A stretch of 33,912 bases of DNA from Lenisia limosa (Eukaryota; Protista; Breviatea): positions 1-33,912 of the forward strand of contig LPNZ01006159.1 in assembly GCA_001655205.1 (NCBI GenBank), written 5' to 3'. Made by a program: the position numbers and the translations under genes. Positions 1,056 to 18,105 of the stretch are shown in pieces. Under the pieces are notes generated by a model that saw only the letters and a list, made by a program, of their open reading frames with translations, had not been told where the DNA came from and searched no databases. Position 1 is the first letter of the stretch. Each line of letters begins with the position of its first letter.

Positions 1056-4000
1056 TTAGTAACGCTGCTGAGACAGAGGGTGGAAGAACTTGGAAGGGGG
1101 AAGCGGAGAAGAAGGTAAGGGGCTTGGTGGGGGTGATGGCGTGGGGTGTGAAGGCACGATTGGGGGGTTGGAAACAGGGAGGAAGTCACTGAACATGGCT
1201 TTGACTGTTATGTCACCTAAAGAGTAAGATGAATAAAGCATGCGATGCGGGTGGAAAGGCAACCCCCCCCCCCCNNNNNNNNNNNNNNNNNNNNNNNNNN
1301 NNNNNNNNNNNNNNNNNNNNNNNNNNNNNNNNNNNNNNNNNNNNNNNNNNNNNNNNNNNNNNNNNNNNNNNNNNNNNNNCTAAACAGTGAAATGCACAAG
1401 AAAATGGATATTAATAAGTTGAAGTACCCACTTTTTTGCCCTTGCTATGACAGAATAATCGCCTATCAAGGCTAGATCATAGATCGACATCCCATGACAC
1501 CGTGCTACAAGCACTCCAACGGCTCGGTCAAGGTCAGGCCTATTGGGGTCAGGTCAAGACGGTAAAATTGGAGAATTTATGAACAAAAAAGCCCAAAATC
1601 AACTCTGTTGGCTAACACCACATGAGTTGAGAACAACAAAACAAACAAAGNNNNNNNNNNNNNNNNNNNNNNNNNNNNNNNNNNNNNNNNNNNNNNNNNN
1701 NNNNNNNNNNNNNNNNNNNNNNNNNNNNNNNNNNNNNNNNNNNNNNNNNNNNNNNNNNNNNNNNNNNNNNNNNNNNNNNNNNNNNNNNNNNNNNNNNNNN
1801 NNNNNNNNNNNNNNNNNNNNNNNNNNNCATTCCAAAAGAGAAGACAGTAAGCAGAAACGCCACAATGCCCACTCGTGCCAAGGCTTATGCGATATGGACC
1901 TGGCCCAGAGTGCCAGGGGTGGGGATGCATTGAAGTTCAGCGACACAGTCCAGGCAAGTGAGTCGCAAGAGTCGTGCCAGTGACTCTGAAGTATGAGGAA
2001 TGCTTGTAGTAGAGAGAATAAAATTAAACTCATTTAAATTCCAATGATTATAAAACATTGTAGAGTTTACCAATTCTGTGGTCTGAAAAAAGCTGAGACC
2101 TTTTTTTGAGAAAGAAAAGCTTACCGTGATCTTAGGGGAATTGCCTAAAAGAGCGGCGGTTGAAGCGTANNNNNNNNNNNNNNNNNNNNNNNNNNNNNNN
2201 NNNNNNNNNNNNNNNNNNNNNNNNNNNNNNNNNNNNNNNNNNNNNNNNNNNNNNNNNNNNNNNNNNNNNNNNNNNNNNNNNNNNNNNNNNNNNNNNNNNN
2301 NNNNNNNNNNNNNNNNNNNNNNNNNNNNNNNNNNNNNNNNNNNNNNNNNNNNNNNNNNNNNNNNNNNNNNNNNNNNNNNNNNNNNNNNNNNNNNNNNNNN
2401 NNNNNNNNNNNNNNNCACGTGCATGCTACTGTCTATCTAATTACAGTCTAATCATTCCAGAACCATTAACGAACTCATTCACAATACGTTAAAGTTTTGG
2501 TTTAGTTTTGCCTTCGCCTCCCCGTCACAGATAGACAGCCAACCCGCAGCCAACCAGCAGGTCGTGCCGCTGCAGCGTCAATGAGGTTTGTAATAGCCAG
2601 GGAACTGGGGGACAAACGCAGAATAATGCGCAGGTGGCCTTTGTCCTATGCGGAATATTACAAAATACACAAACTTTCTATGTCACATTTGTGGAGCTTC
2701 AAAAAACTGTTAACTCACAGATTGCAGTTAAATATCATATGATATTAGGAAAGTCTGAGGAAAGCCACTCTAAAGCACCCACTGAAGAGTAAGGCAGGAA
2801 CGAGTTGATGTCATGGTAGCCTTCGGAGGGAGGTGCGGGGTCCAGGTACGACCCATGTTCAATCTGGAGAGGGCGAGTGAAAAGGTGGTTGTAAAACAGA
2901 CTTCTATTCGAATTAAGCTTCAAAGAAAGAACCTTCAATGACTATTACCCATATCATACTAAATAAAATCACATATCCCTCTCACCCTTACACAACATTA
3001 ATATCACATACTCAAACATTAATATCACATATCCCTTTCACCCCACAGATATTTAACGATACTTTCTACATGCTATCATAACAATATCGCTTACAGCATT
3101 GACTAAAAGCTCTCTCAAGGCGGGGGCAAGACTGGACTGGAACACCCTGGTTATCCAGGGCACTTGCAGGGACTCGGCGCGTGACATTGCGTCTATTCGT
3201 GACCATGTAGTACCTATGTGAAGATGAGGGGAGGTTGACGATAAAGACCTTACAGAACAAATTTAACATCGGTGAAAATTAGTTGTGTTGAGAAAAGAGG
3301 AAATGCTTGTAGTCAAGCCAACTAACCCAGAAAGAGTCTCCATGGACCTTTGAACTCCAAAACTGCGCCTTGGCATGTTTTTACCGATTTCGCGCCGCTG
3401 AGTGGTGAACTAAAGGAACAGATGAACAAATTCAGAAAGCTATAAATACATTGTAACCAAAAAACATGAGTTTTAACTTGTGTGATATCCTAATGGGAAA
3501 ACAAACTTTCAACTGATGAAACACCTCTACTTACCCTGGAACGAATGCCTTAGAATTGAGAGAAAGGCCCTTGGTTCGCTCATTCGGCGTTCCAGGATCG
3601 TCGGACGAAATTGTTCGATATCCAGAGGGCAACTCTCCGAAACCATCCCATTCCTCGTCATCACCTAATGCAGTTACGGAGATATTGTCATCATCAATAT
3701 GAATGTACAGATGAGCTTTGGAAACAGGAGTTGAGTATTTAGACAATATTGGAAGGGAGGGGGGGGGGAGGCTTCAAAATGACAAGTTGTGCCTACCATG
3801 AACAACGACGCGCACGACGTACTCGCCAAAAAGGGCGTCAATAGCTCTGCGCTGTGTCACTTCACTCTCGTTCCAAAACCGAGCCGATTCCTCCGAGCCA
3901 AGCCCTGCAGAAACGTTTTGTCAGAGCGAGGTATGCTGGCTACGTTTGGAAAAAGCGATAATGCTGAATACTTGGAGAAGTATTCATAGATTCTCTTTGT

Positions 4001-7000
4001 ATAATTATTACAGTGGAGTGTCAAGTCCCAATAAAACATCGCAAAAGTTACAGTGTAGTGTCAGGTCCCAATGAAACATCGCAAATATTACAGTGGAGTG
4101 TCAGGTCCCAAAGAAAAATCGCAATTGACAGTATCCACTGGATTGGTCCAATGACAGCCCATCGCACCGCTATCACCAATGCGTAGAGCTTTCGGCAGCA
4201 TCATGTTGAAGCACTTCTGAATCCCTGATCTCCCAATCCTGTGATGATGAGCTGAATATGGGTGGTCCATTCAACATGGTTCACAAAAAAGAGGGAAATA
4301 GTTCGATCCTGAATAATATAAAATAACAAGTCATAAGACTTATAATCGTTATTTTTGTTGGGGAAACGCCACTTATAACCTACTTGGTGGACGCGGGAAG
4401 AGCGGAAGCATCGCGAGGCTGCGGGAACTTCTGAGAGAGAATGGAGAGATCGCCATCAACAACTTGAAACTAGGCGTGATTAGCTCCATCACAATCGCAT
4501 TTGGATGTATCCGATCAAACTTATCAAATCAATAACAGGAACAGAGCAGCCTAATACTGAACTACTATAAAAGCTGAACTTTTGTACCAGGATAGAATCG
4601 CCACCCACCTGGCTTTCTCCGGTTTGCGTGAACGCGCGGCCTTGATACGTAAATGGCGTATCCGAAACTCCAGTGCTCATCGTCAAAATGTACCGTTGTG
4701 GCTTTTTGGAAGAAATGGAAACCACTGCCATTTCAATCTATTGGATTAATAAAAAACATGGGGCTGGGAACGCGAAAACTCAAAACTTGTGCAAACTTTG
4801 GAATAGGGAGAAACATTGCGTCGAATTTCGGCCGACAGCAGAGCCTGTAACTGGGTGACCTCATGTTGCGTGAAACCTTCCACAAAAGGCGCCGAGTTGG
4901 GGTCCTCACGAATACCGAAAATCTGGACAATTGAGACTGAAAACCAACAAAGAGCTTAGCAAAACAAAGAAAGCATCCCAATACCCAGCGGACACACACT
5001 ATCTAGAATGACAATAGATCCTTTTTTGCTTACCATGACACAGGCAATTTCTCTGTTTTGGGAGTGGTACGCCAGTGAACAAGCTAAACTGTCAGTGACA
5101 ATGTGGACAGCTCCGATGAAAACTGGAACTAAGCACGAGTAAATATTTAACCAAGACCCACAATTAGCTCCTGCGATAAACTGCCGGAAGACCCTGTCAT
5201 AATCGGGCTTTCCAAGACGATTAACGGGGCCCTTCTTAATCTATATAGATAAAACTTAGACCTGTAGTTCAAACATTTGGAGAACACTTGATACGGAAAC
5301 CAGATATTCTGTTCAAACATTAACTGATTAGGCTTCAACACCCACCTTGGGGATTTGGGCCTTGTATTGGAGGCACACAGTGAGGTCATCAATGGTTGTG
5401 AAACCTTCATATCGTGGAAGTGCTAAGGGGTTAAAACTGCTTTTACCATATCACCAAAATGAGAAGTAAAAACATATCATATTTAGAGCCGCTTTTACAA
5501 GGTTATTTTTGGTTTTAGCATCCCTTGCAGAAACATACCATCCAAGTTTGAGAGAATAGACCAAATCTGCCTTCCAGTCGGTGCAGGGTCTGCAACTGAT
5601 AGAATAAGTGATAATTTACGATTATGAAATTGCACGAGAAAAGAAAAAAAGAGCTTCATTCTGATGAACCAGAAGGAACACTCTAAAAGGCCACATGCTT
5701 GTTATACAAAAGGAAAGGTAAGGAGTCCAACAGCCAACCATGCGGGTCCTCATGATAGGCAATCAAACGCCTTACTCCCTGGAAGAGTGCCCTAGTTGGT
5801 GAGCGTCAATACACTGAGTATAATATAAAAATAGGGTTGTAATATAAAAATGACACTTTCACCATAATTATCGCATTCGATCACCAAATCAACAGTTCCA
5901 AACCTTCCTGAAACTTCGCCCAATGTGGCCACAAATGTGTCAACCTAATAATAGGTCAAGATTGTGTTTTTAAAAAAACACTTCAATGCAAAAAAAAACA
6001 ATAGTTTTTTGTTTACAATCAGCTCACAGGAAGTCCAACGAATTCATCCCAGTCCAGTACGGCGAACTCTTTCGACTGTGAGGAGTATTTGCCGCCTCGG
6101 TACCACTCCAGAAAGCTGACAACTGGCTTGGATGCTGTGGGGGGTGGGGTGACTGTACAACTAAATTATCGACTATTCAATATTCTACTGGGCTTTTCAG
6201 GACTTAGAAAAGAACTAATGCCAAGAGCACAAGGAAGGATAACAACGCTTACAATGCTGTAATTGCGGAATTTCTGGCAATATCAACTTGTCCGGAACCC
6301 TGCGTTCACTTTCCCTCCTCAGATCTCGGCTTTGGCCATGAAAAGGCTCCAGCGGCGGGCCTTTGATTGCGGAAACAAAAGTCTGCAATCTTGAAGGCGA
6401 TGGTGGAGGCGTATCCTCTTTAAACCGATCGGGGTGAACAGGGTCAATAGGGTGGATGGAGGCTTTGGGGAGAGGTGGCTCTGGCAGTGTATTACCTACA
6501 GAATCAGAAAATTCAAATTTTGAACCTTGTGACAAAAAACTAATTAAGCTTCCAACTCGAAAAGAAATCACCGTTTGTAAAGAAGAGCAGGGTGTCACTT
6601 ATTCCGTAAAAGACTGGTAAAATATCGATATTTATTTAGTCTTTTTCGGACCGAAGCGACGCCATCAAGAAAAGTATCCATACATACCATCCTTTTGGGC
6701 TTCAAGTTCATCTTGCTTGGTTGCAAGGAAGGATATGATTGGCTCCGGGAGAGCTGGCGGCTGCATGATAGAATCGATAGCAGGAAGGTCACTGAGGGAC
6801 GCCGAGCGGTGCTTCTCCATAGGGGCTGTGAAGATGACACCGTGGATTCAAGAATGATGATGAAGAGGAATAGACAAATTAACTGAATGATGATGAGGAA
6901 TAGATAAATTAACTCGCATTTCTTGAAAACATTCCTCATGCACCACGAACCTGACAAACTGGACCCTCGTGGACGTGTGAAACTAGGGTTGGAATCAACC

Positions 7001-16600: not shown

Positions 16601-18105
16601 GAGAATTATACCATCGAAAAGAGTGCTTGTATTTCATCACGGTAACAAAGGATAGGAGTAACATTTACCACGTCATATTCTAACATGATAGGATGAGGTT
16701 ATCAATGCTTCGAATTCCGCCACGGCAACCAAAGTGGGCTGGGCTTGGGTTCTTCTGTTCCATGTTTCTTCTCCTTCTTTTTTTTTTGATTTAGGTACAT
16801 AGTAATATATGTCCTGACTTGCTGGTTTTGACTCTTCAGAACCTCTCGAAATTCCTTCGGACGCGGCAATACACCAAGGACTGGCATCCAGATTCCTTCA
16901 GAGCACAGGTATGCGGCCGGCGACGTACCTAGCGAATTATTCGTCGTAGAATGTTCCATACTCCCCCTCCCCACGTTATCCAAGATGATGCGACTGGTCT
17001 GGGCTTTGTTTGTTTTGTTGATCTCAACCCTCATATGTTGCTACCAACAGAGTTGATTTTTGGCTTTTTTTTTGTTTCATAAATCACTTTTACTCCCCCG
17101 CTCGTCTTGAATGTGATTTCTATTTCAAAACTCCGAGTGTCTCAGAGCTGACCTTGAGGGGGGGGGGGTCGCAATATAACATTCCGATTTACCGCCTTTC
17201 AGATTGCGAACGCTATTGGACACCAGAATGACGTTGCTGTTCTGAAGAGGAAAACGGAAATGGCAAGACTTAGCGAACAACCCGAGTCTAATAAGACCGA
17301 AAAGGCCACAACAGTTCAAGGTGACACTGAGGACAGGGAAGAGAAGGAGAAGGAGAAGAAGGAGGTGATGGAAGAGGAAGAAGAAGAAGAGAACGTGAGA
17401 CAAGAAGGCAAGGAAGCAGATGAAGGAAAGGAAAAACGAAGGAAGGAGGATAAGGAAGGAGAGATACGACAAAGCAAACTTGAAGAAGATGCATCCGATG
17501 AAAAAGATACATCTGATGAAGAAGATAAAAAGGATACAAGGAACAATGAGAGTAGCGAAGAAAAGGAGGAAGAAGAGGATGAATTGGAAAAGGAGAAAGA
17601 CAAAGAAGAGGAGGAAGAAGAGAGCGATAGTGACGAGGTAAAAGCTGATAAAGAAGAAAAAGAAGATAATGATTGTGTGAGCAAAGAAAAAGAAAAAGAA
17701 AAAGAAACGAAACTTGAAATGGAAGAAGATGATGATGAAATTGAGGAAGAAAAAGAAGAAGCTGAAGATGAAGATGAAATTGAGGAAGAAGAAGAAGAAG
17801 ATGATGATGATGATGGAGACGAAGAAGTTAAAGAAAACAAAAAATATGATGAAAGTGGTGTGAAAGAAAAAGATGGTGATGATAAAAGTGGTTTAAAAAG
17901 AGAAGCAGTTGATGAGACTGATGTTGAATCCGGAAGTAAGCAGGAAGGCAAAAAGGAGAAGAGGGAAATAGTTAAAAGAAAAAAAGAGAAGAAAAAGGAG
18001 GGAGAATTGAGGAAGAGGGAGATGAATATGAATAAGAAGACAAGGCCATGGAAGGAGGCGGTTAATCACTATCTTGGGTTGTTAGAAAAAACAGGGGTCA
18101 AATAA
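13671..18105 (+). CDS. Ulp1/SENP-family (peptidase C48) SUMO protease, Ulp2/SENP6-7-like, with an acidic C-terminal tail (multi-exon)
   Basis: Spliced motifs: AVNVTHEDFCRLMPGEMLNNTIVDFFIK; VKNWTRDIDVFNQDIIFLPIHSP|AHWSLVAIV (catalytic His 14668-70); RPILIFLDSLG (Asp 16184-86); ILE|WLSNEWCSK; SPN|TQKQTNHVDCGIFMLQHIE (oxyanion Gln, catalytic Cys 16516-18); NLSKFLRTRQYTKDWHPDSFRAQ|IANAIGHQ, in frame with the acidic ORF 17260-18105, which ends in TAA. These match the established C48 motif order. Confidence 0.88.
14491..14562. repeat. Tandem repeat, 3 x 24 bp, inside the intron just before the catalytic His exon
   Basis: AATCCGTCTGAGAGAGGGGGATTC at 14491, 14515 and 14539 (NPSERGGF x3 if translated). 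Confidence 0.95.

What the first reader, a model, noticed from the sequence alone, without database searches (positions are those of the whole stretch)
2500..5435. Intron-rich eukaryotic gene with a bacterial-style Schlafen/AlbA_2 + GHKL (HATPase_c_4) architecture
Seen in sequence: joining exons that are invisible in the ORF track gives an ordered motif series. It runs QYK..RQFIAGAN..IFGIRED..FVEGF..VVSISSK..PFTYQGRAFTQTGES, then ALFG, then EFKGPW, then PALRELLVNAIEHG, then LRIILRL...LAITN. Established knowledge: bacterial AlbA_2/Schlafen proteins fused to the 'RecG C-terminal' HATPase_c_4 domain show the same order (EFK..AFAN..GG..IGVxD; PY..G..Y.R.G; LLFG; GPL; ALREALVNAxxHRDY; I.I....lEI.NPG). 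Schlafen domains are tRNA/rRNA endoribonucleases in animal innate immunity and have been implicated in prokaryotic defence. Inference: this may be a laterally acquired, intronised defence or translation-control nuclease in a protist, an architecture I do not associate with eukaryotes.
Basis: partly seen in the sequence, partly recalled or inferred. Interest (0 to 1): 0.75.

Follow-up and report, generated by a model that had tools for sequence, protein, structure and literature searches.

The report
Divergent Schlafen-ATPase-like gene in a protist
An expressed, intron-rich gene of a eukaryotic microbe probably encodes a very divergent copy of the bacterial Schlafen-plus-ATPase defence module, but the match is weak and several residues the enzyme would need cannot be found.

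Summary
The quoted motifs all exist on the minus strand, in about 13 short exons (window 5599-2555). RNA contigs of a polyA library confirm three GT..AG introns in the 3' half. The 5' half and the last exon, hidden in an N run, have no RNA support.

No single exon matches Pfam, NCBIfam, PDB or the ESM Atlas. Exon 3 finds no relative among 1.84 billion proteins, and the genome holds no paralogue.

A local profile of real bacterial AlbA_2+HATPase_c_4 proteins does place the exons in order:
- Exons 3-4 align with the AlbA_2 core: 23.9 bits against 12.8±1.8 for shuffles.
- The exon 10|11 join gives the GHKL N box: 22.4 bits against 11.8±1.7.
- The whole chain scores 32.6 bits against 14.1±1.8 (0 of 1500 shuffles, 0 of 88 unrelated proteins).

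QYK=EFK and ALFG are not supported. The GG, HRDY and NPG hallmarks are degenerate.

Verdict: probably (about 0.65) a highly divergent eukaryotic member of the known prokaryotic "Schlatpase" architecture, perhaps no longer an enzyme. Lateral transfer and nuclease activity are untested. The joined protein was sent to no search or fold tool. The scan had already noted a different Schlafen-helicase gene in this genome (s1-194164).

The parts
5540..5599 (-). Possible exon E0, uncertain. The open frame reaches back to an ATG at 5659. Donor GTATGT lies at 5538.
   Evidence: Open stretch and splice signal only. No RNA and no profile match.
5346..5422 (-). Exon E1, holding the QYK string.
   Evidence: Open frame between a TAG acceptor and a GTGGGT donor. 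Its match to the family's E..EFK motif is not above shuffles.
5162..5240 (-). Exon E2, ending in FIAGAN.
   Evidence: Weak match to profile positions 28-39 (the A.AN motif): 8.8 bits, 26 of 200 shuffles as high.
4797..4936 (-). Exon E3: first part of the AlbA_2-like core (IFGIRED..FVEGF..helix).
   Evidence: Rank 2 of 1309 open stretches, profile positions 47-86. hhalign P 0.013. Part of the 23.9-bit E3-E4 alignment.
4609..4737 (-). Exon E4: second part of the AlbA_2-like core (strands, then PF.Y.GR....G).
   Evidence: Rank 4 of 1309, profile positions 92-122. hhalign P 0.024. The free spliced alignment picks it unaided.
4384..4469 (-). Exon E5 (linker), inferred.
   Evidence: Open frame and GT/AG only.
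4177..4238 (-). Exon E6 (linker), inferred.
   Evidence: Open frame and GT/AG only.
4007..4124 (.). 40-nt tandem repeat, 3 copies, inside intron 6.
3797..3904 (-). Exon E7, holding ALFG. Inferred.
   Evidence: The ALFG match is not above shuffles.
3535..3715 (-). Exon E8: acidic insertion of about 50 residues relative to bacterial members.
   Evidence: Only one frame is open. The 3' part (3535-3646) and its donor are in RNA contigs.
3327..3397 (-). Exon E9 (EFKGPW).
   Evidence: Both borders are shown by RNA joints. Weak match EFKGP to profile positions 234-238.
3095..3213 (-). Exon E10, ending in the first half of the GHKL N box (ALRELLVNA).
   Evidence: The acceptor is RNA-confirmed. Donor GTAAGC is the only consensus-like one of 11 candidates. 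Rank 6 of 1309. hhalign P 0.001.
2783..2863 (-). Exon E11, starting with IEHGSY (second half of the N box). It adds a loop of about 23 residues compared with the bacterial proteins.
   Evidence: The donor is RNA-confirmed. The acceptor has the best pyrimidine tract of 7 candidates. The N box across the join scores 22.4 bits.
2555..2645 (-). Exon E12: strand plus ITN, where the family has I.NPG.
   Evidence: The acceptor is RNA-confirmed and an RNA contig covers the exon. 12.1 bits at profile positions 295-308, 3 of 200 shuffles as high.
2170..2415 (-). N run that most likely hides the last exon (E13) and the 3' UTR.
   Evidence: The RNA contig goes on for about 255 nt beyond 2554. Those letters are absent from the window and from the genome.

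Best explanation
A single, expressed, intron-rich eukaryotic gene on the minus strand (about 5599 to 2555, plus a last exon hidden in the N run) encodes a protein of roughly 430-510 residues. This protein is a very divergent relative of the prokaryotic Schlafen(AlbA_2)-GHKL ATPase module, PF04326+PF13749, recently named the 'Schlatpase' supradomain.

[quoted passage not shown] In this copy the following are shown:
- the exon structure of the 3' half;
- transcription of the 3' half;
- the collinear profile match of the AlbA_2 core, the N box and the following strand.

The following are inferred: the 5' exons, and that both halves lie in one transcript.

The N-terminal acidic motif cannot be placed. 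GG, HRDY and NPG read S/I, HGSY and TNL. My best guess is therefore that the fold, and perhaps nucleic-acid or nucleotide binding, are kept, while nuclease and ATPase chemistry are weakened or lost. That would make it a regulatory or sensor protein rather than a classical effector. The origin, old lateral transfer or not, is open.
For: RNA:
- Three minus-strand GT..AG joints and exon pieces come from a polyA metatranscriptome.
- The RNA-fixed joints keep one frame open through E8-E9-E10.

Profile built from Pfam-verified bacterial members:
- The E3, E4 and E10 open stretches rank 2, 4 and 6 of 1309. Clustering p = 0.012.
- The exon chain scores 32.6 bits against 14.1±1.8 for shuffles (0 of 1500) and 14.8±2.0 for real unrelated proteins (0 of 88).
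- E2-E4 score 23.9 bits against 12.8±1.8 (0 of 1500, 0 of 546), aligned to profile positions 46-121.
- E9-E12 score 22.4 bits against 11.8±1.7 (0 of 1500, 0 of 523), aligned to positions 275-286.

Other support:
- hhalign, exon by exon, puts E3, E4, E10 and E12 at the same collinear places.
- A spliced alignment with free exon choice ranks this strand first of 18 segment-strands and recovers E4, E10 and E12 with the RNA-confirmed acceptors.
- The E10|E11 join that creates NA|IEH uses the best donor and the best acceptor available.
- The N box is conserved in an independent member, PDB 3LMM.
- Family biology: bioRxiv 10.64898/2026.05.29.728809; PMC13462974.
Against: - No exon reaches any threshold in Pfam, NCBIfam, PDB or the ESM Atlas.
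- Six-frame PF04326 and PF13749 scans of the genome miss this locus but find canonical AlbA_2 exons elsewhere.
- tblastn with bacterial members gives only noise.
- With free exon choice the excess is only z 2.1-2.75.
- The 22.4-bit C-terminal score rests on 12 residues. The N-box columns of my profile are inflated, because the members were fetched with an N-box DNA pattern.
- The family was proposed from these same motifs, so my p-values are not independent of the hypothesis.
- Some 5' exon borders were chosen with the family in mind.
- E1 and E7 do not match where claimed.
- E2 aligns at least as well to the N-box region.
- No RNA covers 3647-5700.
Confidence: 0.65

Rival explanations
1. A real, lineage-specific gene of some other or unknown fold, whose resemblance to AlbA_2 and HATPase_c_4 is a set of chance short motifs picked out by eye.
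For: - Every per-exon search is blank. There are no relatives among 1.84 billion proteins for E3 and no paralogue.
- Several claimed motifs are at chance level.
- The excess with free exon choice is modest.
- The hypothesis was generated from the same data.
Against: - Two independent parts of the protein each exceed all 1500 shuffles and all 500-odd real protein pieces, and they fall on the two expected domains in the expected order.
- The window-wide clustering test, which uses no exon model, gives p = 0.012.
- The pattern E...NA..H..Y is rare by itself, about 1.5e-7 per position by my own estimate from residue frequencies.
Confidence: 0.22
2. Two neighbouring genes: an AlbA_2-like gene (E0-E7) and a separate GHKL-like gene (E8-E13). 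In that case the fused architecture is an artefact of joining exons.
For: RNA contigs cover only 2554-3646. Nothing links E7 to E8. The linker exons E5-E7 have no profile support.
Against: - The frame stays open across all inferred joins with GT..AG introns of ordinary size.
- The spacing fits the bacterial linker plus one insertion.
- E8 has no in-frame start context of its own upstream of the RNA-covered part.
- A polyA library read at low depth (47 million letters) is expected to favour 3' ends.
Confidence: 0.08
3. A recently transferred bacterial defence gene that still works as a tRNA/rRNA nuclease.
For: The domain order equals that of the bacterial Schlatpase. The gene is expressed.
Against: - Similarity to bacterial members is at noise level pairwise.
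- There are twelve introns.
- The acidic catalytic motif cannot be found.
- The GG, HRDY and NPG hallmarks are lost.
Confidence: 0.05

Closest known systems
Prokaryotic 'Schlatpase' proteins: SLFN_AlbA_2 (PF04326) + GHKL HATPase_c_4 (PF13749), usually with a C-terminal HTH. Examples here: L006-L008 and P0005-P0124. Solved member: PDB 3LMM (DIP2311-like).
   Same: - Same order: AlbA_2-like core, then a linker, then the N box, then a strand plus an I.N motif.
- Similar overall length.
- The N-box residues E, N, A, H and Y are in register.
   Different: - Eukaryotic, with 12 or more introns.
- No pairwise similarity and no Pfam hit per exon.
- GG, R-D of HRDY and P-G of NPG are replaced.
- The acidic E..E.K motif cannot be found.
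- An acidic insertion of about 50 residues (E8) and a loop of about 23 residues after the N box.
- Presence of an HTH is unknown and unlikely: at most about 85 residues remain.
SLFN-pAgo (RzAgo) of Runella zeae, bioRxiv 10.64898/2026.05.29.728809
   Same: It carries the same Schlafen+GHKL supradomain, and it supplies the only worked-out mechanism: ATP-driven tetramerisation followed by tRNA cleavage.
   Different: RzAgo has an Argonaute core and intact catalytic and ATP-binding residues. This gene has neither.
Eukaryotic Schlafen-domain proteins: mammalian SLFN11/12/13, SAMD9/9L, and the AlbA_2+DEAH helicase gene of this same genome
   Same: They hold an AlbA_2/Schlafen-type domain in a eukaryotic, intron-containing gene.
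   Different: Those proteins pair the domain with helicase or P-loop NTPases, not with a GHKL N box. L001 and L002 keep the canonical ANT.GG..GV.DDG motif, scoring 22 and 17 bits. This gene scores about 1-2 bits per exon.

Membership tests
SLFN_AlbA_2 (PF04326) | Pfam model hit at or above the gathering score (25.3 bits) | tested here: not met
   No hit for any open stretch or exon at E<=10. The six-frame genome scan finds L001 and L002 but not this locus. The joined protein was not tested.
SLFN_AlbA_2 (PF04326) | Core from ..G[VI].DDG.. through the strands to P..Y.R.G, collinear with the family | tested here: met
   E3-E4 align to local profile positions 46-121: 23.9 bits against 12.8±1.8 (0 of 1500 shuffles, 0 of 546 real pieces). 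hhalign P 0.013 and 0.024.
SLFN_AlbA_2 (PF04326) | A.AN..GG motif | tested here: inconclusive
   AGAN is present at the end of E2 (8.8 bits, 26 of 200 shuffles as high). GG, about 0.8 conserved in the profile, is absent.
SLFN_AlbA_2 (PF04326) | N-terminal acidic catalytic motif E....E.K (compare CbCash E17/D22, PMC13462974) | tested here: not met
   E1 against profile positions 1-34 scores below the shuffle mean (127 of 200 as high). The string equated with EFK reads QYK.
HATPase_c_4 (PF13749) / GHKL | Pfam model hit at or above the gathering score (26 bits) | tested here: not met
   In L006-L008 the model starts after the N box, so it would rest mostly on E12 and the hidden last exon.
HATPase_c_4 (PF13749) / GHKL | N box A.RE...NA..HRDY | tested here: met
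   ALRELLVNA|IEHGSY keeps E, N, A, H and Y in register (5 of 8 hallmark positions). It scores 22.4 bits against 11.8±1.7. Caveat: these profile columns are ascertainment-biased, though conserved in PDB 3LMM.
HATPase_c_4 (PF13749) / GHKL | Strand followed by I.NPG (G1-like) | tested here: inconclusive
   E12 scores 12.1 bits at profile positions 295-308, 3 of 200 shuffles as high. It reads ITNL, so P and G are absent.
HATPase_c_4 (PF13749) / GHKL | R-N-P stretch and G.G (G2) box, ATP lid | not testable with these tools
   These would lie in the last exon, hidden in the N run 2170-2415. A look-up in other assemblies gave nothing.
Schlatpase supradomain | AlbA_2 and GHKL in one polypeptide, in that order | tested here: inconclusive
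   Order and spacing fit: the chain scores 32.6 bits against 14.1±1.8. No RNA links E7 to E8.
Spliced eukaryotic gene | Introns removed from polyA RNA | tested here: met
   Three GT..AG joints in RNA contigs.

The most novel reading that the evidence does not exclude
A free-living anaerobic protist has kept, intronised and still expresses a prokaryote-type Schlafen-GHKL immune module. This would be a eukaryotic 'Schlatpase' in which a GHKL switch, rather than the helicase of animal Schlafens, controls a Schlafen domain. It would be a missing link between bacterial and eukaryotic Schlafen immunity.
Probability: 0.2. Interest if true: 0.65.

Novelty: new member of a known kind. Interest (0 to 1): 0.4.

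Why it matters
Schlafen nucleases act in both bacterial and animal immunity, and how the module passed between the domains of life is an open question. A eukaryotic gene with the bacterial Schlafen+GHKL layout would show that this layout also entered eukaryotes. It could then be tested for ATP-driven assembly and tRNA cleavage. As it stands the evidence is moderate, and the copy looks enzymatically degenerate, which limits its weight.

Tried and rejected
Searches that gave nothing:
- Single exons or open stretches against Pfam, NCBIfam, PDB sequences and the ESM Atlas: nothing.
- phmmer of E3 against 1.84 billion representatives: four hits, all coiled-coil or repeat proteins, so spurious.
- Paralogue search in the own genome: only self hits.
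- tblastn of three bacterial members against the window: noise.
- Rfam: nothing.
- Pfam on ten neighbouring ORFs: nothing.

Attempts to reach the hidden last exon or a spliced transcript:
- RNA loose-end letters searched in the window and the genome.
- An E12 pattern in metagenome contigs.
- A relative search in metagenome contigs.
- An exact-protein look-up.
All were blank.

Other dead ends:
- An AlbA_2-motif DNA pattern, meant to give an N-box-unbiased family set, fetched only glycine-rich phage proteins.
- My first chain test put an X at every exon border, phase-0 borders included, which broke the N box and gave p of only about 0.003-0.015. It was replaced by the version with true junction residues.
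- Contigs C8785 and C11617 were checked for a canonical Schlatpase gene in this genome. Only single-exon hits turned up.

Rejected: pseudogene, because the frame is intact and the RNA is spliced.

The only use of ordered exons was in local scripts, against a local profile.
Full report
**What is there.** The finding lies on the minus strand. Three-frame reading of 2417-5700 shows every quoted string in short open stretches, in the stated order. I placed GT and AG borders around them. This gives twelve firm exons plus an uncertain first one (E0 5540-5599), and the last exon is missing from the window:

| Exon | Window coordinates |
|---|---|
| E1 | 5346-5422 |
| E2 | 5162-5240 |
| E3 | 4797-4936 |
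| E4 | 4609-4737 |
| E5 | 4384-4469 |
| E6 | 4177-4238 |
| E7 | 3797-3904 |
| E8 | 3535-3715 |
| E9 | 3327-3397 |
| E10 | 3095-3213 |
| E11 | 2783-2863 |
| E12 | 2555-2645 |

The introns are 59-272 nt long, all GT..AG, and one frame stays open throughout.

**RNA evidence.** One polyA metatranscriptome run of the same study as the DNA holds contigs over 2554-3646. These show three minus-strand joints. Read with the allowed shifts, they are GTAAGT..CAG (3534..3398), GTTAGT..TAG (3326..3214) and GTGGGT..TAG (2782..2646).
- These joints keep the only open frame of E8 running through E9 into E10.
- One contig is unspliced over 3369-3564.
- The contig that covers E11-E12 continues for about 255 nt that are not in the window or anywhere in the genome. 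The last exon therefore most likely lies in the N run 2170-2415.
- No RNA contig covers 3647-5700, so E0-E7 are inferred.
- Earlier notes of this scan, unchecked by me, name the organism as the breviate Lenisia limosa, assembled together with bacterial contigs.

**Standard searches, exon by exon.** All were blank:
- Pfam and NCBIfam at E<=10, PDB sequences and the ESM Atlas.
- phmmer of E3 against 1.84 billion cluster representatives gave four hits, all repeat or coiled-coil proteins.
- The genome has no paralogue of the E3 or E10 stretches.
- Six-frame scans of the whole genome with PF04326 and PF13749 do not pick this locus. They do find canonical AlbA_2 exons elsewhere (L001, L002) and a possible GHKL exon (L003).

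**A family profile.**
- I fetched natural bacterial members from viral contigs with back-translated N-box patterns.
- I verified three of them as PF04326+PF13749+HTH and added nine spaced homologues.
- From these I built local HMMs of 24 and 38 sequences.
- As positive controls, the canonical AlbA_2 exons of L001 and L002 in this same genome score 22 and 17 bits.
- tblastn of single bacterial proteins against the window is pure noise.

**Tests that use no exon model.**
- Among the 1309 open stretches of all six frames of the window, the stretches holding E3 and E10 are the two best with the first profile.
- With the broader profile, the E3, E4 and E10 stretches rank 2, 4 and 6, at profile positions 47-86, 92-122 and 274-284.
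- Each score is only 0-2 bits. Even so, three collinear hits among the top six within 2.5 kb on one strand occurs in 2438 of 200,000 permutations, p = 0.012.
- I also ran a spliced profile-to-DNA alignment with free choice of GT..AG introns. It ranks this strand first of 18 segment-strands at intron penalties of 2-4 bits (z 2.1-2.75). It recovers E4, E10 and E12, including two RNA-confirmed acceptors, along with some junk exons.

**Tests that use the exon model.** In a local script I aligned the ordered exon peptides to the profile, filling split codons from the DNA.

| Exons tested | Score (bits) | Shuffles within exons | Unrelated real proteins or pieces | Profile positions |
|---|---|---|---|---|
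| All, chained | 32.6 | 14.1±1.8 (0 of 1500 as high) | 14.8±2.0 (0 of 88) | - |
| E2-E4 | 23.9 | 12.8±1.8 (0 of 1500) | 0 of 546 | 46-121 |
| E9-E12 | 22.4 | 11.8±1.7 (0 of 1500) | 0 of 523 | 275-286 |

The E2-E4 alignment covers the AlbA_2 core from ..G[VI].DD.. to ..R.G... The E9-E12 score comes from twelve residues, ALRELLVNA|IEH.

- E12 adds 12.1 bits at positions 295-308 (3 of 200 shuffles as high).
- AGAN (26 of 200) and EFKGP (17 of 200) are weak.
- QYK versus EFK (127 of 200) and ALFG (35 of 200) are at chance.
- hhalign, exon by exon, agrees on E3, E4, E10 and E12. It also shows that E2 can align to the N-box region.
- The E10|E11 join that creates NA|IEH uses the only consensus-like donor of 11 and the best acceptor of 7. 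In all, 37 of the 77 combinations keep the frame open.

**Caveats.**
- My profile's N-box columns are inflated, because its members were fetched by an N-box pattern. The box is nevertheless conserved in PDB 3LMM, which was found by homology alone.
- The family was proposed from these very motifs, so the p-values are not independent of the hypothesis.
- Some 5' borders were chosen with the family in mind.
- The Pfam model PF13749 starts after the N box. A Pfam-level test would therefore depend on E12 and the hidden exon.

**Reading.**
- Most likely (about 0.65) this is a very divergent eukaryotic relative of the prokaryotic Schlafen+GHKL 'Schlatpase' module.
- That module makes up 60,692 of 103,533 prokaryotic Schlafen proteins. 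[quoted passage not shown]
- Prokaryotic Schlafen catalysis needs acidic residues such as CbCash E17/D22 (PMC13462974). Here the acidic N-terminal motif cannot be placed, and GG, R-D of HRDY and P-G of NPG are replaced.
- Compared with the bacterial proteins, this one has an acidic stretch of about 50 extra residues (E8) and a loop of about 23 extra residues after the N box.
- I therefore expect a fold-level relative with weakened or lost catalysis.
- Lateral transfer is untestable at this divergence, and a recent transfer is unlikely.
- HATPase_c_4 has been listed in coral genomes (PMC6214176), so the domain is rare in eukaryotes but not unheard of.

**Left out.** That step (HHpred/Pfam and AlphaFold of the spliced protein) is the decisive one.

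Noticed in passing
L001 (G000:C9591:6710-9844), minus strand: An intron-containing gene with a canonical AlbA_2 exon (..FANTEGGDLVFGVNDDG.., 22 bits) next to an exon carrying a helicase Walker A motif (GETGSGKST).
   Followed up: partly
L002/L171 (G000:C11617, about 1504-1575 of L002), minus strand: A second canonical AlbA_2 exon (..ALANTSGGRVVIGVTPDG.., 17 bits) on a 77-kb contig. No GHKL exon was found within 1.5 kb downstream.
   Followed up: partly
L003/L170 (G000:C8785, L003 1486-1650), plus strand: An open stretch resembling the GHKL G2-box region of HATPase_c_4 (..ENRGGGVKFI.., 10 bits; Pfam 17.8 bits with a TGA inside). No AlbA_2 exon was seen on the first 9 kb of the contig.
   Followed up: partly
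window 2646-5538: The introns of this gene are 59-272 nt long with ordinary GT..AG ends. Earlier notes on this genome describe 21-34-nt introns that often end in TG. Either both intron classes coexist, or this contig comes from another eukaryote in the culture.
   Followed up: no
window 3369-3564: One RNA contig runs unspliced through the 137-nt intron 3398-3534, beside a spliced one. This could be intron retention, pre-mRNA, or DNA in the RNA library.
   Followed up: no
window 4007-4124: A 40-nt unit repeated three times (88% matches) inside intron 6.
   Followed up: yes
window 17260-18105, plus strand: A 281-residue open frame that is almost entirely E/K/D-rich low-complexity sequence. It has no Pfam hit. 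It produced the highest null scores in my alignments.
   Followed up: no
window 5163-5240 (E2): By hhalign, the E2 peptide (..PDYDRVFRQFIAGAN) also aligns to the family's ..P.YP..A.RE...NA N-box region (P 0.0017). This is as good as its claimed AlbA_2 placement.
   Followed up: no
window, 14 N runs (for example 1275-1379, 1651-1827, 2170-2415): Fourteen N runs of 46-246 nt in 34 kb. A public DNA contig spans the stretch next to 2170-2415 without a break, so at least that N run holds real sequence elsewhere.
   Followed up: partly
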